64,000 bases of DNA from Schmidtea nova (taxonomy: Eukaryota). The stretch covers positions 239,754,001 to 239,818,000 of the forward strand of contig CM097882.1 in assembly GCA_044892505.1 (NCBI GenBank). Reading direction: 5' to 3'. Both the position numbers and the translations under genes were made by a program. Positions 13,834 through 46,913 of the stretch are shown here, piece after piece; within the stretch, counting starts at the first letter, position 1, and each line of letters opens with the position of its first letter. The notes beneath the pieces are model-generated. The model was not told where the DNA came from, did not search any database, and was given only the letters and a program-made list of their open reading frames with translations.

Positions 13834-13861
13834 ATTTGTTTTTGATCTTAAAATTTAAAAA

Positions 13862-29100: not shown

Positions 29101-30046
29101 TGAAGAAAAAAGACACAAGACTAAGTTCATGTAATTATTTATTAACATAGACAATGAGTGGTGAGAAAAGCTCGCGTTTGTTTTTTTGAAGTGGATACAC
29201 AGTATGCAGATATCGCGCAAGAAGTTTATATAAAATTGTTGGGTATTTGCGATGTTTAGTCGGTGCTGTTAGTCTGACTCCTCGGTGTTCTTTAAATTTG
29301 ATTCAATAAAATAACCCAACACAGAAGAATTTATTTGTAACAATCACACTTTTGACACACTAAGTCTCTTTAAAATTTCACAATAACTTTTATCACTGCT
29401 TCTCCGACTTCGCGTAGGGATAAGTCTCCCCAAGGAAGATCTCCCTTTCTGGTACACTGGAATAATAAATTTGGTTTGGAACTTTTCAAATATCGCTCTT
29501 AACTCCTCACTTGCTGAATTCACTCACTTTTTCTTCGACCATTCTGGCAAACTTTAGTATTTGTCGTTCCCTTTTATACTGTTTCTGGTGATTGGTTTCC
29601 CACTTCGCTGCAACTGTCAAATGGTACTTTACGATTTGACGTTTTAATTTTCCATCTGTCGGTTACTCTCCGGGTCTCCTCCAAAGTTATTTTTCTCAGG
29701 AATTATTACCTGTCATATTGCTTGTCCGGGTTTCCCACACTCTCCGGGTTCTCCATTGTCTCGGGTTTCCCATTTGCTCGGGCTTTCCCTTAGCCAATTA
29801 ATTATTAATTAATATTTTAATATTTTAATTATTTCTTTCTGGGGACCCCCCATTGACTTTGTTTTATTATTTTTGGATTCGTTTCAATATTCGGCATCCA
29901 CCCATACCAATTTCCCCCGCTAATTCTCGGTTTTCGAATTTTACCTAAATTTTAATTAATTTTGAAAATTTTATACTTTATTGATTGTTACTAAGTTTTT
30001 ATGATTTTTATTTTTGTATTTTTCTAATTTTTACCAAACCCCAACA
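29101..30046 (-). repeat. 3' LTR, ~946 bp (TGTTGGGG...CTTCA)
   Basis: Begins TG directly after a PPT. Contains TATATAAA (29225-29232) and AATAAA (29138-29143) and ends CA. The first 62 bp recur at 46852-46913. The left boundary is inferred. Confidence 0.8.
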
Positions 30047-30062
30047 TACCTCTCCCCTTTAA
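30047..30062 (-). other. Polypurine tract
   Basis: Minus strand TTAAAGGGGAGAGGTA immediately before the TG of the LTR. Confidence 0.85.
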
Positions 30063-30149
30063 TTTAGATTCGACCTCGAATCTATGTGTTTATGTACATG
30101 TATAAGTATTATTTGTCCATTTTTTTTTGCAATGCTAATAATAACTCTA

Positions 30150-30169
30150 AAATTAATAATAATAATATC

Positions 30170-30230
<61 letters not shown>

Positions 30231-30357
30231 TAATAATAATATTAATACTAATAATAATACCCTTAACAATATTAACAATAATATCAATAACAATACTAAC
30301 AATACTATCACTAATAATACCGATAATATTAATAACATTAATAATCCTAATAATAAT

Positions 30358-30407
<50 letters not shown>

Positions 30408-30460
30408 CACTAACAATAATGATATTAGAGTATTACCGACGATAATGATAATGATAACTA
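30150..30460. repeat. (AAT)n microsatellite, partly degenerate
   Basis: Long AAT/ACT triplet tract. Confidence 0.95.
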
Positions 30461-30744
30461 TCATCTTATATTTTATATATATAAGTATTTTCTATGTATT
30501 TATTCTGGTATGTAATCTTACAACTGTAACATTGTAGCATGTAACTATAAGTAAATAAAATTTAACCAAAAAAATGTTTTTAATAAACCTCAACCAATTG
30601 CAAAATTTTCATTAATGCCAAAATACATCAAATGAAATATTTCATTACGAATTTCTAAAAATCTTATAAATTTATCTATATAATTATTACTGGGAATATC
30701 CGATACATATTACGGGACCCGGTGAGTTGCCAATTATTTCATGT

Positions 30745-30762
30745 TAATAATAATTAATAATA

Positions 30763-30841
<79 letters not shown>

Positions 30842-30860
30842 TTGATAATAATGATGATAG
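30745..30860. repeat. (AAT)n microsatellite
   Basis: Near-pure AAT tract. Confidence 0.95.
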
Positions 30861-31462
30861 TGGCAATGATAAATGATTTCCCAATTTTATGTCGTGAATT
30901 TATGAAAATAATACTGATGAATTATCAGTGTACTTTATTACGTTACACGCCAGAAGTTGTTTTGACACATCAGTTTGCCACTATTAAATTCCTGATCATT
31001 AATTCACTTCATGCTGATCATAAACAACAAAGTTATAAGCTTGTATGTTTATGAAAATAATAATCAAAATAATAATGATAAATTACGGGTATAATTTATA
31101 TATTATTTTCTTTTTTAAATTCACTGATTTTCGTCATGCTTTTACAGTTTTGATGCCACTGTTTCGGAGCTTACTTTTCACTTGGAACGATTTTATCTCG
31201 AGGGATTAATTTCCTCCTCGGTGAACAACACTCACTCTCCGCGAGACTATTTGAATCAGAACTAGCCATTTATCAAAGCTGTCAAATTTTCTTTATCGAG
31301 AATTAAAGAATATTTATGATAGTTACATATTCCACCTACTAAAAGAAAACTTATTCGGGACTCAGAACTGCTTTCTCTGTGAGGGTATGCCTATTGGAAA
31401 ATTGGCGTTTGTTTTTCTCTCATTCGTCAGCCAGTTTGCCTATATTACCAGGTTCATCATAT

Positions 31463-32061: not shown

Positions 32062-32245
32062 GTTTCAAAATTCATACAATTGTGTACACAGTCGCTAACT
32101 ACTGTCGCTACGCATCTGACTCGTAAAAGCATAAAACGAATTATTCTTTATTATTACAATAATAATGAATCGGTATGAAATATACGTTGTCAACAATTCT
32201 TTTTGTTTTATTATTATTAAAATAAATTTTAATAGTTGGAATTAC

Positions 32246-34346
32246 GGTGACCGGACAAAACAGAACAAGACAAAACAGAACATGACAAAACAGAACATGA
32301 CAAAACAGAACAAGACAAAACAGAACAAGACAAAACAGAACAAGACAAAACAGAACAATGACAAAACAGAACATGACAAAACAGAACATGACAAAACAGA
32401 ACATGTGGAAAAAAAGTTATATATTATATTACATTATTTTTATTTTACATTATTATTGTACATATTATTAAATTATTATTTTACAACTGGAGGTTGGCCA
32501 TTTTACATTTGCAGCGATTTGAATTACAATCGAATTTACAATTACAGTATTCCCCAATTTTTATAAAAACACTTTTGGAAATATTTAACTTTAAATAATT
32601 TCTATAAATTCTTTATTCTTTCCTAGTGCGATTTTTTCTATAAAATTTAACTGACTTTTATACTTTTTTCTACCTTGTCAGAAAGGAATTGATCCTATAA
32701 GTATCTCTATTGCAGTATAATATTATCATTATAGATTTGTATTTCAAGTGATACAGTTAAATTAAAGCTTTAAAATAAATAATAAAATCATGGAATATTC
32801 AATCACAAATAAAGAAAATAAATGTCTATTGTACCAAGGCTATGAATATACAAAGTATAGGGAAAACCAAGACTGAGTCGTCACCTGGAGATGCAGAATC
32901 TACTTTTCCACGAAATGCTGAGCATTGTTGAAAACACAAGGAGAAAACATCGTTGGAGAGGTCCCTCAACACTGCCATCAATCAAATCCTCAAAAAGCAC
33001 AGGCAAATATTTTAAAGGCTAAGATTAAGAAGGACATAAAAGCAATTGGTGCAACTCCAAGAAATATTCTGGGAAATGCCTTAGCATTAGTAAATAGCGA
33101 TGTTTTGGAACATTTACCAAAGCAATCCTCACTCACAAGAAATCTTGGTAGACATAAGGAAACTTTTTCTTTGCCGAATCCAGCTACAACTGATTTTATT
33201 ATACCAGAGAAATTTCTTGATCTCATTTTATATGATACAGGAACTGATGATCCAGAAAGAATATTGGCAATCGGGAATAATGATATTGCCTCAGAGCTAC
33301 ACAAGGATGTCATTTATGGAGACGGAACATTTGATAAAGCACCTAACATGTTCTATCAGCTGCATACATGGCATGCTAAGATTGGAAATTCATATCCTCC
33401 ATGTATATATTTTCTTTTACAAAAAAAGAATATGAGTACATACAACAGGATGTTTGTAATACTAAAGGAATTGGTGCCCAATATGACACCTCAAAAAATT
33501 CTACTGGATTTTGAAAAAGCATGTATGTCTGCTGCTCAAGCTGCTTTTCCACAAGCAGAAATAAAAGGATGCTACTTTCATCTCAGCCAAAGCTTAATTA
33601 GGAAGATCAACAGTGTTGGATTGAAAGCACTATATGAGTCCGATATTGACATAAAGTTGAAACTGAAGTCGTTAGCTGCACTCTCCTTTGTTCCAATCTT
33701 AGATTTAAAAACTGTCTTTGACGAACTAGCTGCAACATTTCCAGATGAGGATGCCTACAATCAAATATTAGCATATTTCTGCTCAACCTACATTGAAGGA
33801 GTTGCTGGAAGATCACCACTCTTTCCAATAAGAATATGGAACCATTTCGAGGCTGCTGCTGAGCGATCTCCCAAGACAACAAATTGTTGTGAAGGTTTTC
33901 ACAACGCATTAAATTCAATATTTCATTGTAGTCACCCAAGCATATGGAATTTATTAGATGGACTAAGACGAGATATGGCTTGTCAGCGATTAATACTAGC
34001 CAATGCCCAGACAGGTCGCCAAGAAGTGATAAAAAAGAAGTACGAAGCCATTGCTCTCCAAGTGTCAATAGTTGTGCAGGAATACCACGCTCACGAAGAC
34101 AAATTGAGGTATTTACGCAGAATGGCCAACCTCCAGTAATACTTACAACATCAAGATTAGATGTAAAATAATATGTACAATAATAATTTAAAATAAAAAT
34201 AATGTAATATAATATATAACTTTTTTTCCACATGTTCTGTTTTGTCACTGTTCTGTTTTGTCACTGTTCTGTTGTGTCTTGTTCTGTTTTGTCATGTTCT
34301 GTTTTGTCATGTTCTGTTTTGTCTTGTTCTGTTTTGTCATGGAACC
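32246..34346 (+). mobile_element. MULE/Mutator DNA transposon, 2101 bp, with TIRs built of 15-bp tandem repeats
   Basis: GGT...ACC termini; 8-bp TSD GGAATTAC (32238-32245, 34347-34354); ~230-255 bp TIRs with (ACAAAACAGAACATG)n arrays. Confidence 0.95.
32790..34139 (+). pseudogene. MULE transposase (FLYWCH + DDE) with two in-frame stops near the N-terminus
   Basis: The ATG at 32790 is in frame with ORF 32925-34139. LLYQGYEY...TWRC...C...H.H; YGDGTF, ILLDFEKA, KGCYFHLSQ, TTNCCEGFH. TGA codons interrupt the FLYWCH part. Confidence 0.92.
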
Positions 34347-34789
34347 GGAATTACAGTCTACTTCTTTTTAATAGAAGGCATTTTTTTTTAAAATGTATAG
34401 TTTATACAAACGGTATTTATGATGACAAGTGGGTAAAGTAGTGATCTGCTTTCAATATCACAGTGTTGATAAAAGTTAAATGGCAACTACAATTTTTTTG
34501 CTTTGTATGTCAGTGTTTCAATTTAGCAATTGAGCATCAATATTCTCCTGTAGTGTTTTCGATCATCTCATTTATAATTTGTTTCTTTTGGGAAATGAGA
34601 AGTAAAGAGGTATGAACTTAATATTGTATTCCCAATGATAAACACAGTGTGACGGGAACTACAGAACGTAAATGTTTTACTTTATTTATTCAATTATATG
34701 TTTAATGTAAGTTCGATTTAATATTTATTTTACTTAACACTATGCGAAATTTGAAATTTAATAATAATTCGAATGATTGTGTGACGTCG

Positions 34790-34814
34790 TCAACAATAAT
34801 AATAATATTAATAA

Positions 34815-34846
<32 letters not shown>

Positions 34847-34900
34847 CTAACGGCGATAACAACAATAACAATAACAATATTAATAATATAATGACAATAA
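34790..34900. repeat. (AAT/AAC)n degenerate microsatellite
   Basis: Triplet tract. Confidence 0.9.
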
Positions 34901-35279: not shown

Positions 35280-36743
35280 TCAATCCATTCTTATCTCGAT
35301 TCGATTAGATCCATGCTTGTAACGAACAATTGTTTCTTCTCGTTCATAGATAACACCGCTGTATAATATGGTTTTGCTGACTTCAATTGTCGAATCTGCT
35401 TTCCTTCTCAACTCGTTTACTTCTCTAGGCATTGGGCCATATCCTAACGTGGGTTGGAGTTTCACAATGTTCCAGTTTGGTATTGTTTCCAGACTCTCTT
35501 CAACTGGATCTATCAATGTTTCCACTGGATAACTTAGATCAATAATAGGAACTTCGCTCTCTTCCATTACTATGTCTTCATTTGTTAGATCTATTGCTTC
35601 CATAGCCATGTTCTCCGGGATTTGTGCTAACTTTTGCCTATCGGTTCCTTGAGTTAATTTGGATGTGTTGGCATATAAAATTTTGTATTCCTTTAGAGAA
35701 TACTTTCTTGATGGTTGTTTTCTGGGAATCACTATATCGTCAATCCATTGATTCTCTACCCGTTGGTATATCTTCCGTATCGTTTTGACATCCTCCAGCG
35801 CAGAGTGTATCCCAACCTGCGTTTCTTCTCCGCATATTTCCCGTGCTACCGTCTGCAGCTTGAACCACTCTCCTCTTCTGGTTACGTTCATTCTTTGTAG
35901 TATTTGTGCAGCTGCAAGATCCCGTATCCCATACAGTTGATCTACCCATATTCCAAGATACTGTAGTTCGGCGTGTAAATCGTGGCCTATTAATATTTTT
36001 CCCACTGTTAGCCTCTGAATATCCTTCATTTCCGAATATTGATCATGCTGATTTCTGCTGGCTACCTCTGTAATTCCATGGATCTTGGAATTGAAATGGC
36101 CAATTTTTCCTCTTGGGGTCAAATACACGTCTTTAATTATTTTTCCATGGTAATTTATCATCGCAACTGATAAAGGGATCATTCTTTTCGTTTCCGATGT
36201 GGCATATTCCGCGTCCACAAATATTGTTCTGTTCCGAATTTCTTCCATATCCATTTTTTTCCTAATGAATGAGAGTTTCCTTTTTAACATTTCTGCTGAT
36301 ATTTTCATCAACGTTGAATCCTGTTCCTCTGATGGCTGTGCGCTTGGCCTCTCATTTGGCTCGTTTTCTATTCTTGTTTCTAAAACAATGATTGTTTCCT
36401 CATTCGCTGCGCGTATAGGTTTCGCCATGATTTCATTTTGGATCTTCCAGGACGAAAATTTCTTCAATTCCATCCACGGCTGATTCCCGTCCATTATTTC
36501 TACTGTTCCTTTGATAACATGTAGGTAATATTGTTCTTTATTGGATATTCGAACTTCGTCCGCTAACTTCATTCCCATCTTTCGGTGTATTCTGAGTATT
36601 TTAATTTTCATTTTTCGGTCGTCGATTCTGAAATAATTTGGGATTTGTAAGTTGTCTGTAATCTGGAATTTTTGCCCTGCATGGCGTCTTTGCAGCTTTG
36701 CATAGCTGTCTAATGTGGATCTTGTCCATTGAATTTGTTCCAT
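35280..36743 (-). CDS. Retroelement accessory ORF, 487 aa, with REX4/ISG20-like DEDDh 3'-5' exonuclease
   Basis: ExoI FVDAEY (36207-36218), YLTPRGKIGHFNSKIHGIT, ExoII ILIGHDLHAE, IRDLA, ExoIII HSALEDV (35790-35807). Intronless, same strand, ~410 bp downstream of the polyprotein stop. Confidence 0.88.
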   Translation of the reverse strand: MEQIQWTRSTLDSYAKLQRRHAGQKFQITDNLQIPNYFRIDDRKMKIKILRIHRKMGMKLADEVRISNKEQYYLHVIKGTVEIMDGNQPWMELKKFSSWKIQNEIMAKPIRAANEETIIVLETRIENEPNERPSAQPSEEQDSTLMKISAEMLKRKLSFIRKKMDMEEIRNRTIFVDAEYATSETKRMIPLSVAMINYHGKIIKDVYLTPRGKIGHFNSKIHGITEVASRNQHDQYSEMKDIQRLTVGKILIGHDLHAELQYLGIWVDQLYGIRDLAAAQILQRMNVTRRGEWFKLQTVAREICGEETQVGIHSALEDVKTIRKIYQRVENQWIDDIVIPRKQPSRKYSLKEYKILYANTSKLTQGTDRQKLAQIPENMAMEAIDLTNEDIVMEESEVPIIDLSYPVETLIDPVEESLETIPNWNIVKLQPTLGYGPMPREVNELRRKADSTIEVSKTILYSGVIYEREETIVRYKHGSNRIEIRMD

Positions 36744-36748
36744 TCTTA

Positions 36749-36831
36749 CTGAAATATTTATAATTAAAGGTTTATCAATATAAAATTTGAAGCTAGGGTT
36801 AAGATGAAGTGCCCAAAGGGTACTGTCTTAC
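36749..36831 (-). other. Putative 83-nt 5'-UTR intron / splice acceptor for the exonuclease ORF
   Basis: Donor CAG|GTAAG at 36831 and acceptor TATTTCAG ending 5 nt before the ATG. Confidence 0.45.
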
Positions 36832-37151: not shown

Positions 37152-40100
37152 CTACACAATTGTTTCTTCATAGATCATCCAAGGTCTCGAAGGCTCGGAT
37201 TGAATCGTAGAAGGTCTGTATATTTTTATCGATTCGCAAAAGACAATAGCGCCAAATGTGATGAGAAAGATTGTTAGGATAATGATGGTTATAAATAATA
37301 TCACGCACGCGATTTCTTTGTCATTGTTTATTAATGATATAGTTTTATTATTTACAATTGATTTATTGGTGATGTCATTGAAAGGCGTTGTCATCTGATT
37401 TTGGTACAGTGCATTTGAATCGCTGTCATCTATTTTGTCGTAAAAGATTTGGACGAACTTGTCCTCGACTAAAGTTACTCGCCATAGATTAGAATACGAG
37501 GTGCGACGCTGATATTTGATTTTCATAAAGACAAATTTTGACCTTGACTTTGATCGTAGTTGTTGAAATGTTAATATTTGAGATTTATTGCTGCTGTCTA
37601 AGATTGCCTGAACTTTTCCACAATAGTATATAATAGCTTTTTGATTTGGGTCTGCTCTCCAAGTAACATTTATTAACTGATTGTAGATATAAAACTGAAC
37701 TCGGTTCGTTTCGTTGATCAATTTTATCGCTTGTTGACTAGACTGAATTTCAATCCATAGATTATCGCTGACGGTTACATTATCATATAAGGATTTTTCA
37801 TAATAACGGAACAAGATATTATATGTCTGAAATAATTTCAAATTAACATAGTTTATAAAGGGTTTTCTGCTGTTCAGCGTGTCTATAGCATAATTCTGGA
37901 AGACAGTTTTCACTTGTTGGGTTTCTTGTGGTTCCCAATGTACATTAATTCCATTAACAACGGGTTCAATAGAAACAAGATGCTCTAACCTTTTCGTCCA
38001 AACATCGAGATGTACCATATTATATATTTTTGTAGTATTCCCTTTAGAGCTTAATTGTGTTATTAGCCACTGATATTTATAATTCATCGTTAATTGCCGT
38101 GCCACGTGAGTGTTTTTATTATAATTCAATCTAACTGGGGGTTCAAAATAATCTAGTAAATTATTTACTTCAATTTCCTCTTCCCTTTCACCGTGAAAAA
38201 ACCATACGATCTGGGTACATGTTGCATATATGTGAATTTTATCCATCAATGGGATTCTTTTTGTTGCATACGAGGGAAAAACTCGTATTGCACTTATACA
38301 CAAGACATTTGCCATCATTATTGTTGAAATCAACAAGACTTTGTTGATATAGTTTAGTGGAGCTGAGTTTTTTGTAAATTTTTGTTTTACTGCTCCTTCT
38401 CCGTCTTTAATTAGTTTTGATCTCAATGGATATCGTGTTATTTCCTCCGACGGAACTTTCTTGCACCGGTTTACATGAACAATTATTGTTCCAGCTTTTT
38501 TATTATTCTGTGGGCGTAATTTCAAATTAGTTTCTGTAGTATCACATACGATATATGGTCCTTTAAACGGTCGCTGCAATTTTGGGGATAATCCCTTTGT
38601 TGGCTCTGGTTTATTCACATAGACTAAATCACCAATTTTAATATCATGTGCATGAGTGCGCTTGTCGTAGCACTCCTTATATGCTTCTTGCTGATGTTTT
38701 ATTTTAAGTCCGGCTTGAATCCAAACTGTCTGGAGTCTTTCTTGCATAATCACTTTATAATCTGATACATCCATATATCGGGAAATAGGCGACTGAAATT
38801 TCAGATCGATAGGCATATTGTTTCTTCGTAAGTACATGAGATAGAAAGGTGTTTCACCGGTACTTTCGTTCACTGCATTTCTGTATGCATACAAACATGG
38901 TTTAATGAATAAATCCCAATCTTTTTGTTTTCTATTTACGTATGACGATATCATATTAATTAGTGTTTCATTGAATCTTTCCACTAATCCATCTGTCTGT
39001 GGGTGATATGGTGATGTACTGATTTTCATTATTCCAAATAATTCTGTAATTGATTTGAACAATTCGCTTTGAAAATTTGTTCCTTGGTCAGTAAGCATTT
39101 TCTTTGGTGCCCCATATCGAAATATTATGTTTTCCACATACATCTTTGCAACTGTCTCAGCTTTCTGGTTTTGCATGCGGTAGGCTTCTGGCCATTTGGT
39201 TAAATAATCACAGAAGACAATAATGTATTTATTGCCGTTTGTCGTTTCTGGTAATGGACCGACAATATCCATTGCCGTCATTTCCATTGGTGCCACCGGT
39301 ACAGACATTGGTTTTAAAGGAACTCTAATTTTTCGTCCTGTGTTTCGTCTAGTTAAGCATATTTCGCAAGTATGACACCATTGTCTGACATCTTGTTCTA
39401 TAGTGTCCCAATAGTATTTTTGTTTTAATCTTGACAATGTTTTTCGAGCTGATAAATGCCCTCCTAATGCTCCGTCATGATACAACAATAATAATGATTT
39501 TCTATGTTTTGTTGGAACTATAATTAATAAATTTTCATTTCTTACGCATTTTAGCAAACCATCATGTATAATGTATTTATGTCTTTCCTCAACAATGTGC
39601 TTCCAGTCGCTTTCTTTTCTAATTGTAACAGCCTGTTGCCGTAGCTGATTCAATTCATCATCCTTTTCTTGATCACTTTGCAATTCCTTCATATTATTTG
39701 CCGTTTTCATTGCCATAAATATAGTGTTTTCATACTTTGTTTCATATTGAACAACGTCCTCCTCCTCTGAAATTCTCGACAGCGCGTCTGCATTTGCGTT
39801 CGACTTTCCTGTACGATATTTGATCTCAAAATCATATTCCTGCAACGCAATTGACCATCTTATCAGCTTACTTGCCGAGTCTCTGTGCTTCATTAGCCAT
39901 TGTAATGGGTTATGATCAGTGAAAACAACAAATTTCCTACCGATTAAGTATTGCCTGAACGTAGTTATCCCATATACTAATGCTAACGTTTCTTTTTCAA
40001 TCGTAGAATAATTCTTTTCATGCGGTCTTAACGTTCGACTGGCATAAGCGATAACGTGATCTTTCTCACCTTCTACTTGTTGACCTAGTATCGCCCCTAA

Positions 40101-43100
40101 TGCAAAATTACTAGCATCTGTCATCAATAAGAATGGCCTTTTAAAATCAGGGCATCTTAATATAGGTTGTTTCATTAAGCTTTCTTTGAGTGCATCGAAT
40201 GCTTCTTGTTGAGCCGTTGCCCATTTAAATTTTGCTTGCTTTTTTAACAGCACATTTAAAGGTTGTGCGACATGCGAAAAATTTCTTATAAATTTTCTGT
40301 AATAACTAGCTAGTCCTAGAAATTGTCGGACTTGGTCTATATCTTTGGGAATCGGATATTTCTTAATCTTTTGTACATTTTCCGGATTCGGCTGCAATCC
40401 TCGCCGGGAAATAATATGACCTACGTAAACAACTTCAGATTTTCCCCATTCACATTTTGACGGTTTTATCTTTAGGTTTGCCTTTAACAATCGTTTAAAT
40501 ACTGTTTCCACATCCCTCAGATGTTCCTGAAAATTGTTTGAAAATATTATCATATCATCAATATACACTAGTGCATGTGGGATGTCCCGTAATACGAAAT
40601 TCATACCTCTTTGAAAGGTAGCCGGTGCTCCCGTTAAACCAAACGGTAAGACATTAAACTCGTACAGACCTTTACCGTCTGAAAACGCAGTTTTTCTTCT
40701 GTCCTCTTCTTTGACCTTAAACTGATTATACCCTTTGTTAAGATCAATAACAGTAAAGAATTGCACCTCCCCCATTTGATCGAACATTTCTTGGGGAACT
40801 GGAATAGGGTATGTATCTTTTCTTGTGACTTGGTTTAACTTTCGATAATCTACACAGAATCGTAGATCACCATCTTTCTTTTTCACTACCACGATTGAAG
40901 CTGAAAATGGTGATGAGCTATCTCTTATTATTTTGAATTCTTTCATTGCTTTGATTTGCCTATCACTTTCTTCTTGATGAATGTATGGAATCCTATATGG
41001 CCTCAATTTTATAGGGGTTTCGTCCAACAATGGTATCTCATGTTCAATCACTTGAGTGAGTCCCAAATCATATTCATGTTTCGCGAACACATTCCTATAT
41101 CTCTTTAGTAGTGCCGTAAATTCTTGTTTTTGCTCATCTGTCAAATCATTACTTGTAATTTGAGGTCCTTTGTAAATCTTTATATTTCTGGGCAACCTTT
41201 GTACTTCTTCTTGTTTTATTTTTGTCAGTTTCCCCAGCTTTGTTTTGGGTTTCATCTGAATAGATTTTGTGCTACAATTTGCTAATCTTACTGGTACGGT
41301 TTTGTCTTTAACTTTTACTACTTCATCGCACATTGGTACGTCGTACTTCTCTATCAATTTTTGATTTGGTTCAAATATACATTCTTCTTCGGAGACATTC
41401 ATTACATTGGCATAGTATATAACTTCGCTTTTTGGTGGTATTTCCAAAGTTTGATTTAAAAAAACTTGTCCCGCTTCGTGCACAACTTCACCAGATAGTC
41501 CTTTCATCAATTTTCCCATTCTTAAATCAAGAGAAATTCCTTGTAATTGTTCCATAACGTCCATTCCAATCAAGCATTTGACAGGGCTTTTTCTCATTAC
41601 AGATACCCAATGAGTTACTTCTTGATTTCCAATATTCAGCTTAACTTCCAATTTTCCAACGATATTCAATACATTATGCGTCATTGATTTAATAATTTTC
41701 GTAGTTGGCTTCATTCTTGCCTTCTCCTGACTCGTCAAGAGATTCTCAGATACTATGCTGTGACTTGAGCCTGAATCCAATAACGCTTCAACTTTTCGTC
41801 TATTAAATTGTATGTCAATTCGAGGTTGTTTTCCTCCCAATTCTATGGTCATCAATGCATAACTACAAGGTAAACCAAGCATATTCTTTCTTTCAATTTC
41901 GGCGCTTGATGGTTCAATCTTTTCTAATTCGACTTTAATCTTATCAACTGGTTTCATTTCTCTCAACTTCTCACTTGGATATACAGGAGCTGTTGGCATA
42001 AATGTCGGTGTGTACCATTTAGAGAGAGTGTCAATTCCAGTTAGTTTTGGTATTGGTTCCATCAAGAATCTGGATTCGGGGTCTATTCTACTTTTTATTA
42101 TACCCCGTCGAAACGATTTTGGCTCTGATCTGCCGCCATTGCTATCATTGTTGTGACCCTTATTTTTATCTTCAAATTCGCATAGTGATTCTTCACTTTT
42201 CAGATCATTTTTCAATTGTGCTCTAACACTTGCCATTTCCTCATATTGATGATTTGTAATGAAGAATCTAGCCAAAAACGGAATACAACCAATAATCATT
42301 TTCCATGACCATCCGGAAATTGCATATATTCGATGAGCGGACAATATTTGTGATATTATTACTTTTATTGTTACTGCAACTACATAAATGCCAATTAAGC
42401 CTGCACAAGCTTGTCCTAAAAACATAAATCTTCCCCAAATTTTTTCCATTGTTTTAAATGTAGCTCGTTTAAAATGATCAGGTGTCAGCAAATATTCGTA
42501 ATTAACTTTTCCTTCTCCATTTGGCAGTATTGTATCAATCATCTCAGAAATCACTCGTTCCTTTTTTGATGGGAATAATAAATTTCTTTGGGCTTCTTCT
42601 ATATCTTCGCTTGCGTATAGACCCATTTGTGCCATCTTATTCATTGATGTGAAATTTACCAAGTACTCTAAATTTATTAATTCCAATTTATCTGGAGTTC
42701 TAACTCCCCGGTAGTCTGGTAACGCTATCCATGAATCTTGTGCTAAACGATATAGTGGAGCTAATAATCGATTACATTGTAGAATTTTCGGTTTGACTTG
42801 TTCTTCCAACAATATTCGAGTTATCGGTTCCATGAATCGTAATTTCCCGCCAACATTTACCGGTAATTCATTTGTACATTTCTCATATTTCGCGATTTTC
42901 ACTATACTTTCTTTGCACCTGTAACTGTATAATGCTTCTCCAAAGATCCTAGCGAATACACCATTTTCTGATATTAGCATGGGTGCTACTAAATTTGGAT
43001 TAGTAATTGCCATTGCCATTCGATTTCTAAGTATTTCCTTGTTCAACTTACAGTCGTTTAGAATCATTTCTCTATATACGTTTTCCATGATGTTTTGACT

Positions 43101-46100
43101 AAAATGAAACAAATAGTCAATTTTATTATTGAAGTAATGAGTTAATTTGATATCATCCCGGTGAATTCTTGTTTTAGCCTCATATACGATTGTTTTAGAT
43201 ACATAAACTCCTTTGTAATTTGTTGCATATACAGTTTGACCACATTTACTCGTTATGTCCTTTTTTATGAAACGCATGCCGTCTGTTGGCAATGTTGACA
43301 TTAACACTGTTGCCGTTTGTCTCGTCCAAACTGGGGTTGATCTAACTGTATTGTTCGGTTTATAATTCACATTAAAATTGTCCGGTCTTTCCCTAAATTG
43401 CTCTCCGCTCAATTCTTTGAAATTAATAGTTTTTAAATGGGATAAGTTGCATATATTAGTCTTGACATCATAGACAAGAATCGATTCCCCAGTGTGACAA
43501 CTAGTTTGTTTCATATTACAGAATGGATGAGTTTGTAACTTTCCTGTATCGTCATCAAACGACCCTTCGAATACTCTCAATTCTGTTAGATATTCCTCTA
43601 TTACTACTGCTTGTTTTATCACTTGATCATTTATTTTATACGGTTCTCCCTCACAATCGCCGTCTGATTTCATTACTCCTTTCACAATTAATGTTTCTCT
43701 GATTTGATGGTTTACTCGAGCTTTCAATCGAATTTCAGGACTAATTTTTAATTCCCCTGTTTGAAATGCCGTTAAACAGTTTTCTGGTAACACGTCCGCC
43801 GGTCGTGGAATAGCATGCATTTTTATCATCGAAGTATGGCTCCATTTGCCACAAAAGAATACGAACGTGGTTCGTTTAACGATACATTCCCTAACTTGAG
43901 AACGCCGTAAATCGGATTCTTGGTAAACATGATACTTTGCTTCATTTTCAATTTTTAATTTTCTTGGGTATGCATCTGGGCATTCTGTCATATCGACCAC
44001 AGAATAAATTTTCCCCATTTCTGTTTGTGAGCAATCGTATGCCACCAATGAAGTAGCTTGTGCAATTATTGTGCATAAAATAACCATCATGAACAGCACC
44101 CAAGGGAATATCGTAGTTTTTCTTAGTTTTGGGTCTACTTTTTCGTTCAACTTTCTTTGAGGTGGATTCTCATCTTCTTGTTTCTTTCTTTTCTTTGTTA
44201 TAGATGAATTTAATGCTTTCCACCCTCCAAGCTCTTTTATCCCTTTCATCAAACATTCATTTAATAGTCGAGCCGCAGTGTCAATCAAATTCTCAATCTG
44301 ATCTGGCCTAGTAAATGCACGAATACCAATTTCGGAAACCACATGTGTTAAACTTGTTAACACTGTTTTTCTATCGATTCCATTTTCGATCAATTTTTCA
44401 ATCCTTTCTCTTTTACAGAAATCACCCTTTTTTTCAAATTCATGCTCAATTTTTGGAAGTCTCTCTTTCACTTCCTCAACCATCCCTTTCAATTCCTCCT
44501 CAGCTTCTGGTTTTATTTTTAGAATTGGGTAAACAGTTTTAACTAGGTTTCTTATTATTCCTTTAGTTTCATCAACTTCCCGCTCTATATTTAATAAATA
44601 TTTCTTCATCTCATATAAAGTTCTAGGTTTAGTACTCCAATTATTCATTTCCACTTTCTCGACATTTGTCTCTCTGCTAATTGTAGTTTCTGCTACCTGA
44701 ATATTGACTTCTTTCTGATCATCACCTTCATCGTTAGCTATTGCGGTTTCATTTTCTCCTATTTCATCTCTCTTTTCTTCTGTGTGGGAGGATTCCCCGT
44801 TGCCAAGCATTCTCGGGTTAAATTCTTTATTTGCTATTATACGGTTAATTAAATATCCCTGACTTCCATCAGTACTTAAATATCCATATTCATCTAATTC
44901 TTGTGGCATGCATCCACAGTCGTATAAATATTCATCGTCATCCAGTGCTTCACCTTTATGTTTCAATACTATAATTCCATCTTGTCCTAACATCTCCGTA
45001 GCTCTTCTACGTATTTTCCGCACTTTCGTACACCAATGCTCTTCTACATACTCAGTTTTTCCAATATCTTCGTATTCTATTGCAATTACTAATAAATTCA
45101 ATTCTGCTCTATCTTCTCTAAGCTCTTTGCCCAATTTTCTCAGTAATCTCTTTAAATTTCTACTATATCTGGTTCTTTTAAACAGATGCGGTCGTATTAC
45201 GTTGATAATTTCTATTTTATCCTTTTGCTCAAATTCAGATTTCTCAATTAATTTCACTATTTCATTTATTTCGCTTTCATCGCCAATATATAAAACATCA
45301 GATAGCTCCATTAACACTTCCCTCGGATCACTTTTCACCATTTCACAACTACTCCTCATATTGACTATTTGTAACTCATTTTTATCTCCTGGTATAAACC
45401 CACAGTCTACCAAATATTCCTCGTTATCTAATTCTCTATTTTTAAATTTTAATTCTACTACCCATCCTTCGCATTTTTCTCTTAGTCTCCTTTTTAAATC
45501 TTTAACACAATCATAGGCTTCACATCGACAAGTAATCAGACTTTTATCACATTCATTAACAACATCAATAAAAATAAAATCTAACCATCCATTTTCTCGG
45601 AATGCTTTTCCAAATGTTTTCATCAACTCTTTGATTTCATCTCTATCTGCTAAATTTATTTGATAATAGTTTGCACACAAATTAATCACGCATTTTAGTT
45701 TTCTCATACTCAGTGACATTTGACTCAACTTTTTAATTGACATTAATATTTTGGATGACTCTTTTGCGCTAGCTTCTAGCAATTTCTCAAGTCTCTTCAT
45801 CATTATTGTAACTTTTTCGCTTTCCAAATCGTCCTTTGTACATACTCCTTTCGCTTCCGTTTCAGTCATATCCGACCCATACATCATGTGATTATCTAAT
45901 TCCTCATCAGATTCAAACTTAGACATTAAACGATCCAAGCGTCGACCCATTTCTTTCACTTGACTTTCAATTCTATCATTAAATTCGTCTGATTGAACAA
46001 AAGCAACATTTTCTGCTGGCATTCTATCATTTTGAAAACGAATTGATTTTTTTAATATTGGTTTCTGAAATTTATCGACATTTCTCGGGCATGATCTAGC

Positions 46101-46496
46101 CATATGTCCATAGCCTCGACATGAATGACATTGAATTTGGCCTTGAAGGTTCACTCTATCTCGTTGTGGTGATGGCGAAGTGGATGGAGATCTCGATCTA
46201 GCAAAACAATTACGTGAAACATGTCCTTTCCTTCCACAATTGTAGCATTGTATATTATCATTAGTTCGTTGATCTTTAATGCTAAATTTATTTAAGCTTT
46301 TTTCATTATTACCCTTCATCCAATCTGGCCACATTCGTTTTGGGCTTCGTTGTACATTATTTTTAGACCAGCATTGATTGCTATTGTGACCAATCTTTTG
46401 ACAGTGATCACATTGAATTGGAGTTGGGCTTTTTGCGATCGGTTCTTGAACCAACATTGATCGGCATGATGTCCCATCCGTTGACAATAACTGCAT
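37152..46496 (-). CDS. 3114-aa polyprotein: gag C-terminus - accessory domains - class III glycoprotein - PR - RT - RNase H - IN - second membrane protein
   Basis: CCHC knuckles; LVAYDC (44031-44048); LLDSGS (41769-41777); LRFCVDYRKLN; YIDD (40554-40565); TDAS (~40115); H..H/C..C, MDIVGP, LTDQG, GLVER; FKGPY. The true start is upstream, in the gag frame. Confidence 0.97.
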   Translation of the reverse strand: MQLLSTDGTSCRSMLVQEPIAKSPTPIQCDHCQKIGHNSNQCWSKNNVQRSPKRMWPDWMKGNNEKSLNKFSIKDQRTNDNIQCYNCGRKGHVSRNCFARSRSPSTSPSPQRDRVNLQGQIQCHSCRGYGHMARSCPRNVDKFQKPILKKSIRFQNDRMPAENVAFVQSDEFNDRIESQVKEMGRRLDRLMSKFESDEELDNHMMYGSDMTETEAKGVCTKDDLESEKVTIMMKRLEKLLEASAKESSKILMSIKKLSQMSLSMRKLKCVINLCANYYQINLADRDEIKELMKTFGKAFRENGWLDFIFIDVVNECDKSLITCRCEAYDCVKDLKRRLREKCEGWVVELKFKNRELDNEEYLVDCGFIPGDKNELQIVNMRSSCEMVKSDPREVLMELSDVLYIGDESEINEIVKLIEKSEFEQKDKIEIINVIRPHLFKRTRYSRNLKRLLRKLGKELREDRAELNLLVIAIEYEDIGKTEYVEEHWCTKVRKIRRRATEMLGQDGIIVLKHKGEALDDDEYLYDCGCMPQELDEYGYLSTDGSQGYLINRIIANKEFNPRMLGNGESSHTEEKRDEIGENETAIANDEGDDQKEVNIQVAETTISRETNVEKVEMNNWSTKPRTLYEMKKYLLNIEREVDETKGIIRNLVKTVYPILKIKPEAEEELKGMVEEVKERLPKIEHEFEKKGDFCKRERIEKLIENGIDRKTVLTSLTHVVSEIGIRAFTRPDQIENLIDTAARLLNECLMKGIKELGGWKALNSSITKKRKKQEDENPPQRKLNEKVDPKLRKTTIFPWVLFMMVILCTIIAQATSLVAYDCSQTEMGKIYSVVDMTECPDAYPRKLKIENEAKYHVYQESDLRRSQVRECIVKRTTFVFFCGKWSHTSMIKMHAIPRPADVLPENCLTAFQTGELKISPEIRLKARVNHQIRETLIVKGVMKSDGDCEGEPYKINDQVIKQAVVIEEYLTELRVFEGSFDDDTGKLQTHPFCNMKQTSCHTGESILVYDVKTNICNLSHLKTINFKELSGEQFRERPDNFNVNYKPNNTVRSTPVWTRQTATVLMSTLPTDGMRFIKKDITSKCGQTVYATNYKGVYVSKTIVYEAKTRIHRDDIKLTHYFNNKIDYLFHFSQNIMENVYREMILNDCKLNKEILRNRMAMAITNPNLVAPMLISENGVFARIFGEALYSYRCKESIVKIAKYEKCTNELPVNVGGKLRFMEPITRILLEEQVKPKILQCNRLLAPLYRLAQDSWIALPDYRGVRTPDKLELINLEYLVNFTSMNKMAQMGLYASEDIEEAQRNLLFPSKKERVISEMIDTILPNGEGKVNYEYLLTPDHFKRATFKTMEKIWGRFMFLGQACAGLIGIYVVAVTIKVIISQILSAHRIYAISGWSWKMIIGCIPFLARFFITNHQYEEMASVRAQLKNDLKSEESLCEFEDKNKGHNNDSNGGRSEPKSFRRGIIKSRIDPESRFLMEPIPKLTGIDTLSKWYTPTFMPTAPVYPSEKLREMKPVDKIKVELEKIEPSSAEIERKNMLGLPCSYALMTIELGGKQPRIDIQFNRRKVEALLDSGSSHSIVSENLLTSQEKARMKPTTKIIKSMTHNVLNIVGKLEVKLNIGNQEVTHWVSVMRKSPVKCLIGMDVMEQLQGISLDLRMGKLMKGLSGEVVHEAGQVFLNQTLEIPPKSEVIYYANVMNVSEEECIFEPNQKLIEKYDVPMCDEVVKVKDKTVPVRLANCSTKSIQMKPKTKLGKLTKIKQEEVQRLPRNIKIYKGPQITSNDLTDEQKQEFTALLKRYRNVFAKHEYDLGLTQVIEHEIPLLDETPIKLRPYRIPYIHQEESDRQIKAMKEFKIIRDSSSPFSASIVVVKKKDGDLRFCVDYRKLNQVTRKDTYPIPVPQEMFDQMGEVQFFTVIDLNKGYNQFKVKEEDRRKTAFSDGKGLYEFNVLPFGLTGAPATFQRGMNFVLRDIPHALVYIDDMIIFSNNFQEHLRDVETVFKRLLKANLKIKPSKCEWGKSEVVYVGHIISRRGLQPNPENVQKIKKYPIPKDIDQVRQFLGLASYYRKFIRNFSHVAQPLNVLLKKQAKFKWATAQQEAFDALKESLMKQPILRCPDFKRPFLLMTDASNFALGAILGQQVEGEKDHVIAYASRTLRPHEKNYSTIEKETLALVYGITTFRQYLIGRKFVVFTDHNPLQWLMKHRDSASKLIRWSIALQEYDFEIKYRTGKSNANADALSRISEEEDVVQYETKYENTIFMAMKTANNMKELQSDQEKDDELNQLRQQAVTIRKESDWKHIVEERHKYIIHDGLLKCVRNENLLIIVPTKHRKSLLLLYHDGALGGHLSARKTLSRLKQKYYWDTIEQDVRQWCHTCEICLTRRNTGRKIRVPLKPMSVPVAPMEMTAMDIVGPLPETTNGNKYIIVFCDYLTKWPEAYRMQNQKAETVAKMYVENIIFRYGAPKKMLTDQGTNFQSELFKSITELFGIMKISTSPYHPQTDGLVERFNETLINMISSYVNRKQKDWDLFIKPCLYAYRNAVNESTGETPFYLMYLRRNNMPIDLKFQSPISRYMDVSDYKVIMQERLQTVWIQAGLKIKHQQEAYKECYDKRTHAHDIKIGDLVYVNKPEPTKGLSPKLQRPFKGPYIVCDTTETNLKLRPQNNKKAGTIIVHVNRCKKVPSEEITRYPLRSKLIKDGEGAVKQKFTKNSAPLNYINKVLLISTIMMANVLCISAIRVFPSYATKRIPLMDKIHIYATCTQIVWFFHGEREEEIEVNNLLDYFEPPVRLNYNKNTHVARQLTMNYKYQWLITQLSSKGNTTKIYNMVHLDVWTKRLEHLVSIEPVVNGINVHWEPQETQQVKTVFQNYAIDTLNSRKPFINYVNLKLFQTYNILFRYYEKSLYDNVTVSDNLWIEIQSSQQAIKLINETNRVQFYIYNQLINVTWRADPNQKAIIYYCGKVQAILDSSNKSQILTFQQLRSKSRSKFVFMKIKYQRRTSYSNLWRVTLVEDKFVQIFYDKIDDSDSNALYQNQMTTPFNDITNKSIVNNKTISLINNDKEIACVILFITIIILTIFLITFGAIVFCESIKIYRPSTIQSEPSRPWMIYEETIV

Positions 46497-46860
46497 TGAA
46501 TTGGTTGTTCTTTTTCGTCGATTTGAACACGTGTTGATTTATTCATCTCAAAATTTGGTCTAAATTTTGGTGATGGACTACTTGATTGCTGGAGCCGATT
46601 GTTTCTGGCTGGAGAATTGGATCTTTCTCTTGATTCATTGATAATGGCGAAGGATTCTGATTTCGGCTTTGCACTTTTTAAATTTAATTCAATTTTCATA
46701 GCCTTTTTGATTAACTCATCGAAGTTATTGAAATCTACATAACATAAGGCTTTTTTGATTTCCCCTTTTACTCCCGCTAAGAACTGATCTTGTAATAGTT
46801 CCTTTACCTGCTTTGCCACTTCAATCTGTTCCGGTTTTACTTCGAAGGCCTTTGTTACTA
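46430..46860 (-). CDS. Upstream gag segment (capsid end + first Zn knuckle), offset by one base from the polyprotein at an A5 run
   Basis: LQDQFLAGVKGEIKKAL...FDELIKKAMKIE and CSYCQRMGHHADQC. Restoring one A at 46430-46434 fuses it to SPTPIQCDHC. Confidence 0.88.
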
Positions 46861-46913
46861 AGTTTTTATGATTTTTATTTTTGTATTTTTCTAATTTTTA
46901 CTAAACCCCAACA
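46852..46913 (-). repeat. 62-bp stub of the 5' LTR fused directly to mid-gag
   Basis: Matches 29985-30046 with one mismatch. The junction falls in TTAGTAACAA, which reads LVT in the gag frame. Confidence 0.9.

What the first reader, a model, noticed from the sequence alone, without database searches (positions are those of the whole stretch)
29101..46913. Giant Ty3/Gypsy element organised like an enveloped-virus polyprotein with host-control cargo
One reading frame (~3300 codons after repairing one base) runs gag with four Zn knuckles, two helical+ubiquitin-like modules, a Bcl-2-like domain, TM1, a ~600-aa class III glycoprotein, TM2, PR-RT-RH-IN, TM3, a ~390-aa ectodomain and TM4. A separate DEDDh exonuclease ORF follows. 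The hydrophobic segments alternate so that Gag and Pol stay cytosolic and both glycoproteins are luminal, which argues for a designed polyprotein rather than a chance fusion. In errantiviruses and retroviruses env is a separate ORF after pol; here it lies between gag and protease. Partial precedents, recalled from memory and needing verification: planarian Burro giants (single long ORFs with extra apoptosis-related domains), chuvirus-like glycoproteins in Bel/Pao elements, and exonuclease ORFs in bdelloid rotifer LTR elements. I know of no element combining all of these.
Basis: partly seen in the sequence, partly recalled or inferred. Interest (0 to 1): 0.95.

Follow-up and report, generated by a model that had tools for sequence, protein, structure and literature searches.

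The report
Giant retroelement with in-frame envelope gene
This is a real but damaged copy of a giant Ty3/Gypsy virus-like retroelement that carries a viral fusion glycoprotein inside its Gag-Pol polyprotein; that layout is already described in flatworm "Burro" elements, and only a second membrane-bound module after integrase and an ISG20-like exonuclease gene look new.

Summary
The observation largely holds. On the minus strand a 167-codon frame overlaps a 3114-codon frame. Together they encode four CCHC knuckles, a roughly 640-residue cargo region, a full-length Monjiviricetes-type fusion glycoprotein (Pfam PF24664, E 5e-84) between two hydrophobic segments, PR-RT-RH-IN, and two more hydrophobic segments enclosing a roughly 320-residue beta-rich domain. 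A separate 487-codon ISG20-like DEDDh exonuclease ORF follows. Seven diverged relatives (39-51% identity in Pol) carry the glycoprotein in the same in-frame position, and six of them also have the two post-integrase hydrophobic segments. It is therefore a family design, not locus-specific nesting.

It is not unprecedented. In-frame env between gag and protease, with ubiquitin-like and BCL2-like motifs upstream, was described for planarian Burro elements in 2019. GAG-ENV-POL elements with class III env were reported in flatworms, nematodes and bryozoans.

The ubiquitin-like and Bcl-2-like calls could not be confirmed here. This copy is defective: one 5' deletion (most of the 5' LTR, the primer-binding region and the N-terminal Gag), one frameshift in gag, and one nested MULE transposon in the 3' non-coding part.

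Verdict: new variant of a known kind, moderate interest.

The parts
29101..46913 (-). Whole element as far as it can be bounded. The 5' end at 46913 is firm. The 3' end at 29101 is a plausible but unverified LTR end.
   Evidence: 62-nt terminal direct repeat. Purine tract next to the 3' copy. Coding-like composition continues to about 29200. No target-site duplication found.
46852..46913 (-). 5' copy of the terminal repeat: 62 nt, one mismatch to the 3' copy, starts with TG. It is all that is left of the 5' LTR.
29101..30046 (-). Candidate 3' LTR. Its first 62 nt are the repeat. The rest contains a TATA-like box and AATAAA signals and ends in CA. The extent is inferred.
30049..30060 (-). Polypurine tract two bases upstream of the 3' LTR.
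   Evidence: read directly
37152..46819 (-). Polyprotein gene (gag remnant, cargo, env, pol, tail), listed as one broken gene. Breaks: one frameshift, one 5' deletion that removed the N-terminal Gag, and no internal stop within either frame.
46089..46495 (-). Nucleocapsid region with four CCHC zinc knuckles. The relative P0005 also has four.
44157..46019 (-). Cargo region with no family assignment. It holds two copies of one module (45375-45761 and 44889-45281).
   Evidence: Internal repeat E 7e-9, and the same module occurs in P0001, P0002, P0003, P0005 and P0035. No Pfam or PDB hit.
44157..44624 (-). Helical segment just upstream of the first hydrophobic segment.
   Evidence: No Bcl-2 hit. 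Model too poor to use. 27% identical to P0005. Positional analogy to Burro.
44034..44108 (-). Hydrophobic segment 1, inferred to be an internal signal/anchor for the glycoprotein.
   Evidence: KD 2.34. N-flank has 5 K/R and C-flank has 1. A small-x-small motif follows the hydrophobic core.
42150..44096 (-). Fusion glycoprotein, PF24664 Monjiviricetes_fusion. The match includes its own membrane anchor and tail.
   Evidence: 14 of 18 Cys are invariant in 8 sequences at 34-39% identity.
42327..42410 (-). Hydrophobic segment 2, the glycoprotein's membrane anchor. A weaker hydrophobic stretch (KD 1.28) follows it.
41538..41831 (-). Aspartic protease (DSG).
40410..40886 (-). Reverse transcriptase (YIDD).
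39834..40223 (-). Ty3/Gypsy-type RNase H (PF17917/PF17919).
39000..39518 (-). Integrase: H2C2 zinc domain and catalytic core.
38274..38348 (-). Hydrophobic segment 3, after integrase.
   Evidence: Helix in the model. A counterpart exists in 6 of 7 relatives.
37320..38273 (-). Second putative ectodomain: about 318 residues, 7 N-x-S/T sequons, predicted all-beta. The FN3/Ig-like sandwich fold is a low-confidence lead.
   Evidence: Four distant homologues, P0036-P0039.
37236..37319 (-). Hydrophobic segment 4 (KD 3.13), followed by a 27-residue tail and the stop codon.
35280..36743 (-). Intact 487-codon ORF with an ISG20-like DEDDh 3'-5' exonuclease domain at 35712-36248.
   Evidence: Same composition as the polyprotein gene. 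No terminal repeats of its own.
32237..34355 (+). Nested MULE-type DNA transposon in the 3' non-coding part. It has a transposase ORF at 32925-34139 and inverted ends built of 15-nt arrays.
30136..30852 (.). (TAA)n simple-repeat arrays in the 3' non-coding part, with a further array at 34795-34905.

Best explanation
This is a young but defective copy of an env-bearing Ty3/Gypsy (Metaviridae-type) endogenous retrovirus-like element. It belongs to the Burro-like / GAG-ENV-POL kind known from flatworms.

Shown:
- One long frame encodes NC, cargo, a Monjiviricetes-type fusion glycoprotein, PR-RT-RH-IN and a C-terminal membrane-bounded beta-rich domain.
- A separate ISG20-like exonuclease ORF follows.
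- Diverged relatives share the same order of parts and the same four hydrophobic segments.

Inferred mechanism:
- The polyprotein is made as one chain and threaded through the ER membrane, as in a flavivirus-type polyprotein.
- Hydrophobic segment 1 acts as an internal signal, which leaves NC and the cargo in the cytosol.
- The glycoprotein ectodomain enters the lumen. Its own anchor (segment 2) stops transfer, so PR-RT-RH-IN stay cytosolic.
- Segment 3 restarts translocation of the second ectodomain, and segment 4 anchors it.
- Host signal peptidase would cut on the luminal side and the element's protease on the cytosolic side. This yields equimolar Gag, Env and Pol without any frameshift control.
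- The glycoprotein would act as the fusogen. The second domain would act as an accessory surface protein. The exonuclease would be an accessory RNA 3'-5' nuclease expressed from its own message.

This particular copy cannot work. It lacks most of its 5' LTR, the primer-binding region and the capsid part of Gag (one deletion). It has one frameshift in gag and a MULE transposon nested in its 3' non-coding part.
For: - ORFs and translation. Chance of the long ORF is about 1e-112.
- Domains: (PF24664 E 4.9e-84; PR, RVT_1, RT_RNaseH, Integrase_H2C2, rve).
- Hydrophobic segments and charge flanks.
- Relatives: seven giant proteins of 2694-3865 aa, each with PF24664 plus Pol in one chain.
- Colinearity, and the presence of hydrophobic segments 3 and 4 in 6 of 7 relatives. 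One continuous alignment to P0005 runs from the second module to integrase (39% identity over 2284 columns).
- 14 of 18 glycoprotein cysteines are invariant.
- The Pfam profile covers the anchor and tail up to profile position 635 of 653, so what follows the anchor is the natural cytosolic side.
- Sequons: 7 in the 331-residue window covering the tail ectodomain, against 7 in 1201 residues of Pol.
- The tail is predicted all-beta between two helices.
- Exonuclease.
- 5' deletion: the upstream frame aligns to the relatives only from their residue ~130-160 onward. Their conserved N-terminal Gag, which includes Retrotrans_gag, has no counterpart in the window.
- LTR and PPT.
- Precedent: PMC6431247 and PMC13524379.
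Against: - No dedicated topology or signal-peptide predictor was available. A weaker hydrophobic stretch (KD 1.28) right after segment 2 could change the topology if it spans the membrane.
- The tail domain has no detectable sequence similarity to the tails of the seven relatives, so only the architecture is shared there.
- The exonuclease ORF has no detectable homologue of similar length and none inside the relatives' polyproteins. It may be a lineage-specific capture.
- No target-site duplication or primer-binding site was found, and the 3' LTR boundary is unverified.
- The class III fold was not tested. There is no PDB sequence hit for the glycoprotein.
- The host species is not identified, and no Burro sequence was at hand for direct comparison.
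Confidence: 0.78

Rival explanations
1. Locus-specific chimera: an endogenous RNA-virus glycoprotein fragment, or another element, landed by chance inside an ordinary Gypsy element and happens to be in frame.
For: Nesting does occur in this very element (a MULE in the 3' part). Chuvirus-like glycoprotein fossils are common in invertebrate genomes (PMC7642597).
Against: Seven relatives at only 39-51% Pol identity carry the glycoprotein at the same in-frame place with the same flanking hydrophobic segments. Fourteen of 18 cysteines are invariant. The layout is published for Burro.
Confidence: 0.03
2. The core gag-cargo-env-pol is the functional element. The post-integrase module and/or the exonuclease ORF are dispensable, lineage-specific acquisitions with no role in the element's cycle, for example a captured host exonuclease gene and a fast-drifting C-terminal extension.
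For: The tail is not alignable to the relatives' tails and has only four distant homologues among 1.84 billion representatives. The exonuclease has no homologue found. Cargo clearly turns over in this family: a phosphomevalonate kinase domain in P0035, extra protease copies and weak C2H2-finger hits (below Pfam's cut-off) in P0001 and P0003.
Against: Both are intact in an AT-rich genome where stop codons are frequent (about 1e-18 for 487 codons). Six of seven relatives keep two hydrophobic segments after integrase. The exonuclease ORF shares strand and composition with the polyprotein gene, and its DEDDh motifs are in place.
Confidence: 0.25
3. The glycoprotein is not used as an envelope for cell-to-cell or host-to-host spread. 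It serves an intracellular role, such as tethering the polyprotein to membranes for assembly, or it is on its way to host co-option.
For: No particle or expression evidence exists here. The review notes that the role of Burro env is a hypothesis. Chary and Hayashi state that infectivity of such env genes remains unclear.
Against: Full-length conservation of the ectodomain, cysteines, anchor and tail across the family is what is expected of a working fusogen.
Confidence: 0.15

Closest known systems
Burro (GYPSM1, Burro1-4) giant gypsy-like LTR retrotransposons of dugesiid planarians (Grohme et al. 2018; Arkhipova and Yushenova 2019, PMC6431247)
   Same: One huge ORF runs Gag with 2-3 CCHC knuckles, cargo, then env related to mononegavirus fusion glycoproteins in frame between gag and PR-RT-RH-IN. 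Ubi2/SUMO-like and BCL2-like motifs are reported just upstream of env. Tandem repeats occur in the non-coding part.
   Different: This element is about 17 kb with roughly 3300 codons, against more than 30 kb and 4873-5140 codons. There are no Pfam hits to MATH, BIR, ankyrin, SMC or dUTPase. A post-integrase membrane-bounded domain and a DEDDh exonuclease ORF are not mentioned for Burro in the text I could read. No direct sequence comparison with Burro was possible.
GAG-ENV-POL 'errantiviruses' with HSV/gB-type (class III) env in Platyhelminthes, Nematoda and Bryozoa (Chary and Hayashi 2026, PMC13524379; Sacco et al. 2022 as cited there)
   Same: The order is gag, env, pol. The env ectodomain is flanked by a signal peptide plus a TM, or by two TMs. 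The backbone is Ty3/Gypsy.
   Different: That work treats gag, env and pol as ORFs. It reports neither cargo domains, nor a second post-integrase module, nor an exonuclease gene. Whether any of its flatworm elements is this family was not testable because no supplement is held.
Anakin: mosquito Pao (BEL/Pao) elements with a chuvirus-derived glycoprotein (Dezordi et al. 2020, PMC7642597)
   Same: A retroelement carrying a Jingchuvirales/Monjiviricetes-type glycoprotein as its presumed envelope.
   Different: It has a BEL/Pao backbone, not Ty3/Gypsy. By my reading, that paper's introduction places the glycoprotein of other env-carrying BEL/Pao elements downstream of the polyprotein, not between gag and protease; for Anakin it says only that the glycoprotein lies inside LTR-flanked Pao elements, or fused to them.
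Vesta/Juno LTR retrotransposons of bdelloid rotifers with an exonuclease ORF3 (Rodriguez, Kenefick and Arkhipova 2017, PMC5408684)
   Same: A separate 3' accessory ORF encoding a DEDD-superfamily 3'-5' exonuclease in an LTR element.
   Different: Those are RNase D-like DEDDy enzymes in elements described as lacking bona fide env. This one is an ISG20-like DEDDh enzyme in an env-bearing element.
Membrane-threaded polyproteins of flavivirus-type RNA viruses (established knowledge, used only as a working analogy)
   Same: Alternating signal and stop-transfer segments put glycoproteins in the lumen and enzymes in the cytosol of one chain.
   Different: There is no homology. Here the enzymes are retroviral PR-RT-RH-IN, and processing is inferred, not shown.

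Membership tests
Ty3/Gypsy (Metaviridae) LTR retrotransposon | Pol domain order PR-RT-RNase H-IN, with Ty3/Gypsy-type RT_RNaseH and Integrase_H2C2 domains | tested here: met
   There are no BEL/Pao-type families (Peptidase_A17, DUF1759) among the hits.
Ty3/Gypsy (Metaviridae) LTR retrotransposon | Gag with capsid plus CCHC nucleocapsid | tested here: inconclusive
   Four CCHC knuckles are present. The capsid part is missing from this copy but present in relatives (Retrotrans_gag in P0007).
Ty3/Gypsy (Metaviridae) LTR retrotransposon | Two LTRs with TG..CA ends, PBS, PPT and a target-site duplication | tested here: inconclusive
   A 62-nt terminal repeat and a PPT were found. No PBS or TSD was found, and the 5' LTR is cut down.
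Ty3/Gypsy (Metaviridae) LTR retrotransposon | RT groups inside the Ty3/Gypsy clade in a phylogeny with reference elements | not testable with these tools
   No reference set could be brought in. The nearest non-family hits are metazoan Gypsy-type polyproteins at 30-35% identity.
Burro-like giant planarian elements | env in frame between gag and protease within one giant ORF | tested here: met
   Described for Burro.
Burro-like giant planarian elements | Ubi2/SUMO-like and BCL2-like motifs upstream of env | tested here: inconclusive
   No hit here and the model was unusable. The only support is a weak UBX hit in relative P0005 (E 0.006, below cut-off).
Burro-like giant planarian elements | MATH/TRAF, BIR, ankyrin, AIR1/SMC motifs, and a dUTPase between PR and RT | tested here: not met
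   None among the Pfam hits of the long frame or of the PR-RT interval.
Burro-like giant planarian elements | Size above 30 kb with long LTRs and a 4873-5140-codon ORF1 | tested here: not met
   About 17.8 kb and about 3300 codons.
Burro-like giant planarian elements | Sequence relatedness to Burro1-4, and a dugesiid host | not testable with these tools
   No Burro sequence or host identification was obtained. One look-up with a neighbouring non-viral ORF found nothing.
PF24664 Monjiviricetes fusion glycoprotein | Full-length profile match above the gathering score | tested here: met
   283-288 bits against a cut-off of 27, profile positions 5-635 of 653.
Class III viral fusion proteins (rhabdovirus G, herpesvirus gB, baculovirus GP64) | Five-domain fold with internal bipartite fusion loops, trimeric | not tested
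The class is inferred from the literature, which treats these retroelement glycoproteins as gB-like class III.
DEDDh 3'-5' exonucleases (ISG20/REXO group) | Exo I (D, E), Exo II (D) and Exo III (H, D) motifs in order | tested here: met
   Alignment to ISG20 covers Exo II and Exo III, and Exo I is visible in the translation. Pfam RNase_T scores exactly at its cut-off, 24.0 bits.
Bcl-2 family | Match to the Bcl-2 profile, or a Bcl-2 helical-bundle fold | tested here: not met
   No Pfam or PDB hit even at E 10. The fold is undecided because the model had pLDDT 32.
Ubiquitin-like beta-grasp domains | Match to a ubiquitin/SUMO/UBX profile, or a beta-grasp fold | tested here: inconclusive
   No hit with the window's modules, singly or as a two-row profile. 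There is a weak UBX hit in P0005. A strand-strand-helix-strand pattern appears in a low-confidence model.

The most novel reading that the evidence does not exclude
The family makes a two-protein envelope from a single membrane-threaded Gag-Env-Pol chain: a rhabdovirus/chuvirus-type fusogen before protease and a second, non-fusogenic Ig/FN3-like surface glycoprotein after integrase. It adds an ISG20-like exonuclease as an accessory gene. That would be a retroelement lineage combining a retroviral replication core, a negative-strand-RNA-virus fusogen, flavivirus-style polyprotein topology and an interferon-effector-like nuclease. The post-integrase module and the nuclease are undescribed parts of the Burro-like kind.
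Probability: 0.3. Interest if true: 0.7.

Novelty: new variant of a known kind. Interest (0 to 1): 0.45.

Why it matters
These elements show how far a retroelement polyprotein can be extended. One chain carries structural, regulatory, envelope and enzymatic parts sorted to both sides of a membrane.

If the post-integrase surface module and the ISG20-like nuclease prove to be regular parts of the family, two points follow. First, they add to the known repertoire of genes that retroelements capture. Second, they give a compact (17 kb rather than 30 kb) and more tractable representative for describing how Burro-like elements are built and how their env was acquired from negative-strand RNA viruses.

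For genome annotation, it is a reminder that a Monjiviricetes-type glycoprotein in an invertebrate genome may belong to a retroelement rather than being an RNA-virus fossil.

Tried and rejected
- **Sequence searches of the cargo region, the Bcl-2-like candidate, the two-module profile, the glycoprotein and the tail against PDB chains.** Only chance-level hits.
- **Pfam at E up to 10 on the cargo region and the tail.** Nothing. Pfam on the tail's four homologues also gave nothing.
- **AlphaFold2 of the cargo region with a 4-row alignment.** Mean pLDDT 32, unusable, so no fold search was run on it.
- **AlphaFold2 of the tail with a 5-row alignment.** Mean pLDDT 48. Foldseek gives generic tandem FN3/Ig-like sandwiches with low TM-scores (0.13-0.31). 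I treat this as a lead only.
- **Search for homologues of the exonuclease ORF.** None.
- **Search for longer LTRs, a TSD and a PBS.** Only 62 nt are shared. No TSD at either candidate boundary.
- **Search of the whole window for the missing N-terminal Gag.** Absent.
- **Rfam scan of 28000-48000.** No hit.
- **Host identification by exact look-up of a neighbouring Penelope-like ORF.** Not on record.
- **Rejected idea: the frame change in gag is a programmed frameshift.** Relatives encode the knuckles and everything downstream in one frame.
- **Rejected idea: the exonuclease ORF is a separate nested element.** It has no terminal repeats of its own and the same composition as the polyprotein gene.

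Full report
**1. What is there**

The feature lies on the minus strand. The ORF listing gives a 167-codon frame, an overlapping 3114-codon frame and, about 400 nt downstream, a separate 487-codon ORF (translations). The window has about 28-35% G+C, so stop codons are frequent. From local composition, the chance of 3114 stop-free codons is about 1e-112, and of 487 about 1e-18. The next longest ORF in the window has 634 codons.

**2. Domains**

Pfam on the long frame gives, in order:
- a zinc knuckle;
- PF24664 Monjiviricetes_fusion, 'Viral fusion glycoprotein' (E 4.9e-84, 283 bits against a cut-off of 27, profile positions 5-635 of 653);
- retroviral aspartic protease;
- RVT_1;
- RT_RNaseH and RT_RNaseH_2;
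- Integrase_H2C2 and rve.

DSG and YIDD are present. A pattern scan finds three CCHC knuckles in the long frame and one in the upstream frame. The order PR-RT-RH-IN, the Gypsy-type RNase H and integrase zinc domains, and the absence of BEL/Pao families place the backbone in Ty3/Gypsy.

**3. Hydrophobic segments**

A Kyte-Doolittle scan (19-residue window) finds exactly four strong segments (2.0-3.1):
- one immediately before the glycoprotein;
- one at the glycoprotein's C-terminal anchor;
- one about 20 residues after the integrase region;
- one 27 residues before the stop.

Segment 1 has 5 K/R on its N-flank against 1 on its C-flank. A small-x-small motif follows its hydrophobic core. The Pfam profile covers the anchor and the tail beyond it, so the natural cytosolic side of the glycoprotein faces protease. 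The 331-residue window covering the domain between segments 3 and 4 has 7 N-x-S/T sequons, against 7 in 1201 residues of Pol.

No dedicated predictor was available. A weaker hydrophobic stretch (KD 1.28) just after segment 2 is a caveat.

**4. Is it a family design or an accident of this locus?**

A search with the whole long frame returned seven giant proteins from ENA metagenome assemblies (P0001-P0007, 2694-3865 aa). Each has PF24664 together with PR, RT, RH and IN in one chain.
- BLAST shows the glycoprotein before protease in all seven, flanked by two hydrophobic segments. Six of the seven have two further hydrophobic segments after integrase.
- P0005 aligns in a single stretch from the second cargo module to integrase (39% identity over 2284 columns).
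- Identity to P0005 is 58-64% in RT, RH and IN, 41% in the glycoprotein ectodomain, and 21-28% in the cargo region and the tail.
- In an eight-sequence alignment of the glycoproteins (34-39% identity to the window's), 14 of the window's 18 cysteines are invariant.

**5. The cargo region**

It contains two copies of one module (24% identity over 132 residues, E 7e-9). The same module is found in P0001, P0002, P0003, P0005 and the fragment P0035.

I could not confirm the ubiquitin-like or Bcl-2-like folds:
- No Pfam or PDB hit at permissive thresholds.
- The AlphaFold2 model (4-row alignment) had mean pLDDT 32.
- The only hints are a sub-threshold UBX hit at the homologous place in P0005 (E 0.006), a helical prediction ending in a GGW just before segment 1, and the published Ubi2/SUMO-like and BCL2-like motifs at the same position in Burro.

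Cargo clearly turns over in the family. P0035 carries a phosphomevalonate kinase domain (E 1.5e-34). P0001 and P0003 carry three protease-like stretches, and weak C2H2-finger hits, all below Pfam's cut-off. Several relatives have a protease-like domain after integrase.

**6. The tail**

It has no BLAST similarity to the relatives' tails. It has four distant homologues among 1.84 billion representatives (E 5e-11 to 1e-6), and none has a Pfam family. The model (5-row alignment, mean pLDDT 48, best blocks 65-81) is all-beta between two long helices. Foldseek returns tandem FN3/Ig-like sandwiches in PDB and BFVD (E about 1e-6, but TM-scores of 0.13-0.31). This is a lead, not a finding. It does not look like a fusion protein.

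**7. The exonuclease ORF**

It matches ISG20 and ISG20L2 (E 3e-7) and an SDN1-type nuclease. The Exo II and Exo III motifs align, and Exo I is visible in the translation. Pfam RNase_T scores at its cut-off. The ORF has the strand and composition of the polyprotein gene, no terminal repeats of its own, and lies inside the terminal repeats. No homologue of comparable length was found. Its membership in the family, as opposed to this lineage only, is open.

**8. Ends and state of this copy**

- Only 62 nt are repeated at the two ends, with one mismatch.
- A polypurine tract sits two bases before the 3' copy.
- Downstream of the 3' copy the sequence keeps element-like composition and carries a TATA-like box and AATAAA signals as far as a CA at 29101.
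- At the 5' end the 62 nt are followed almost at once by coding sequence with no start codon.
- That upstream frame aligns to the relatives only from their residue ~130-160 onward.
- Their N-terminal Gag is mutually conserved at 30-70% identity and includes Retrotrans_gag in P0007. It has no counterpart anywhere in the window.

Break count:
- Polyprotein gene: one deletion (the N-terminal Gag, lost together with the rest of the 5' LTR and the primer-binding region), one frameshift, no stop within either frame, and no insertion.
- Exonuclease ORF: none.
- 3' non-coding part: one nested MULE-type DNA transposon and simple repeats.

No target-site duplication was found. Relatives encode the knuckles and the rest in one frame, so the frame change is a lesion and not a programmed shift.

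**9. Comparison with what is known**

- Arkhipova and Yushenova 2019 (PMC6431247) describe planarian Burro elements. These have a 4873-5140-codon ORF1 with Gag and 2-3 CCHC knuckles, Ubi2/SUMO-like and BCL2-like motifs, an env region with hits to mononegavirus fusion glycoproteins 'in-frame between gag and pol', and then PR-dUTPase-RT-RH-IN.
- Chary and Hayashi 2026 (PMC13524379) report GAG-ENV-POL Ty3/Gypsy elements with gB-type class III env in Platyhelminthes, Nematoda and Bryozoa, with ectodomains flanked by a signal peptide plus a TM or by two TMs.
- Dezordi et al. 2020 (PMC7642597) describe chuvirus glycoproteins in mosquito Pao elements.
- Rodriguez et al. 2017 (PMC5408684) describe DEDDy exonuclease ORF3s in rotifer LTR elements.

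The headline feature is therefore known. What I did not find described is the post-integrase membrane-bounded domain and an ISG20-like DEDDh ORF. The element also differs from Burro in size and in lacking MATH, BIR, ankyrin and dUTPase domains.

The host is a metazoan: there is a TSP1/Ig exon-like ORF, plus Penelope-like and MULE elements. A planarian host is suspected from these parallels and from the AT-rich composition. That link rests on my own knowledge of planarian genomes and was not shown.

**11. Slips**

- One search used an off-frame coordinate and was corrected.
- While judging the Bcl-2-like and ubiquitin-like claims, I recalled short textbook motif strings from memory in my working. 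One three-letter pattern (GGW) went into the script, alongside textbook patterns for CCHC, D-S/T-G and Y-x-DD. Nothing in the verdict rests on the GGW match, which is marked as a lead only, and nothing was deleted.

**12. Verdict**

The finding is real and well observed in outline. It is a conserved design and not a chance fusion, but its main architectural claim is already published. It is a new, compact variant of the Burro-like / GAG-ENV-POL kind, with two possibly new accessory parts, seen here in a defective copy.

Noticed in passing
window 12058-13834: Two 161-nt direct repeats (12058-12218 and 13675-13834, 94% identical) flank ORFs that retain only an integrase core (rve, E 1e-10). This looks like a heavily deleted small LTR element unrelated to the finding.
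   Followed up: partly
window 57590-60178, and 1118-2096: A Penelope-like ORF (RT plus GIY-YIG; 58084-59988, + strand). Its two ends lie in 544-nt inverted repeats that are 99.6% identical (57590-58132 and 59635-60178). A 90.6% identical partial copy lies at 1118-2096. An exact look-up of the ORF found no record.
   Followed up: partly
window 48371-49951: Long arrays of an 18-nt tandem unit (about 38 and 15 copies) with strong C-over-G skew lie inside long plus-strand ORFs (48365-49249 and 49468-50817). No Pfam family was found. They could be a repetitive host exon or a satellite.
   Followed up: no
window 22044-22688 (-): An ORF with thrombospondin type 1 and immunoglobulin domain hits, probably an exon of a host gene. 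It shows the window is metazoan.
   Followed up: partly
window 18243-19385: A 470-nt inverted repeat, 98% identical (18243-18708 and 18916-19385), sits between two N runs (17846-18215 and 19386-19590).
   Followed up: no
P0035 residues 338-453; P0001 and P0003: Relatives carry different cargo. P0035 has a phosphomevalonate kinase domain after the knuckles and module (E 1.5e-34). P0001 and P0003 have three protease-like stretches, and weak C2H2-finger hits below Pfam's cut-off between the glycoprotein and protease. This suggests repeated capture and duplication in this family.
   Followed up: partly
window 32237-34355 (+): The nested MULE-type transposon has inverted ends built from 7-10 tandem copies of a 15-nt unit, which is an unusual terminal structure.
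   Followed up: partly
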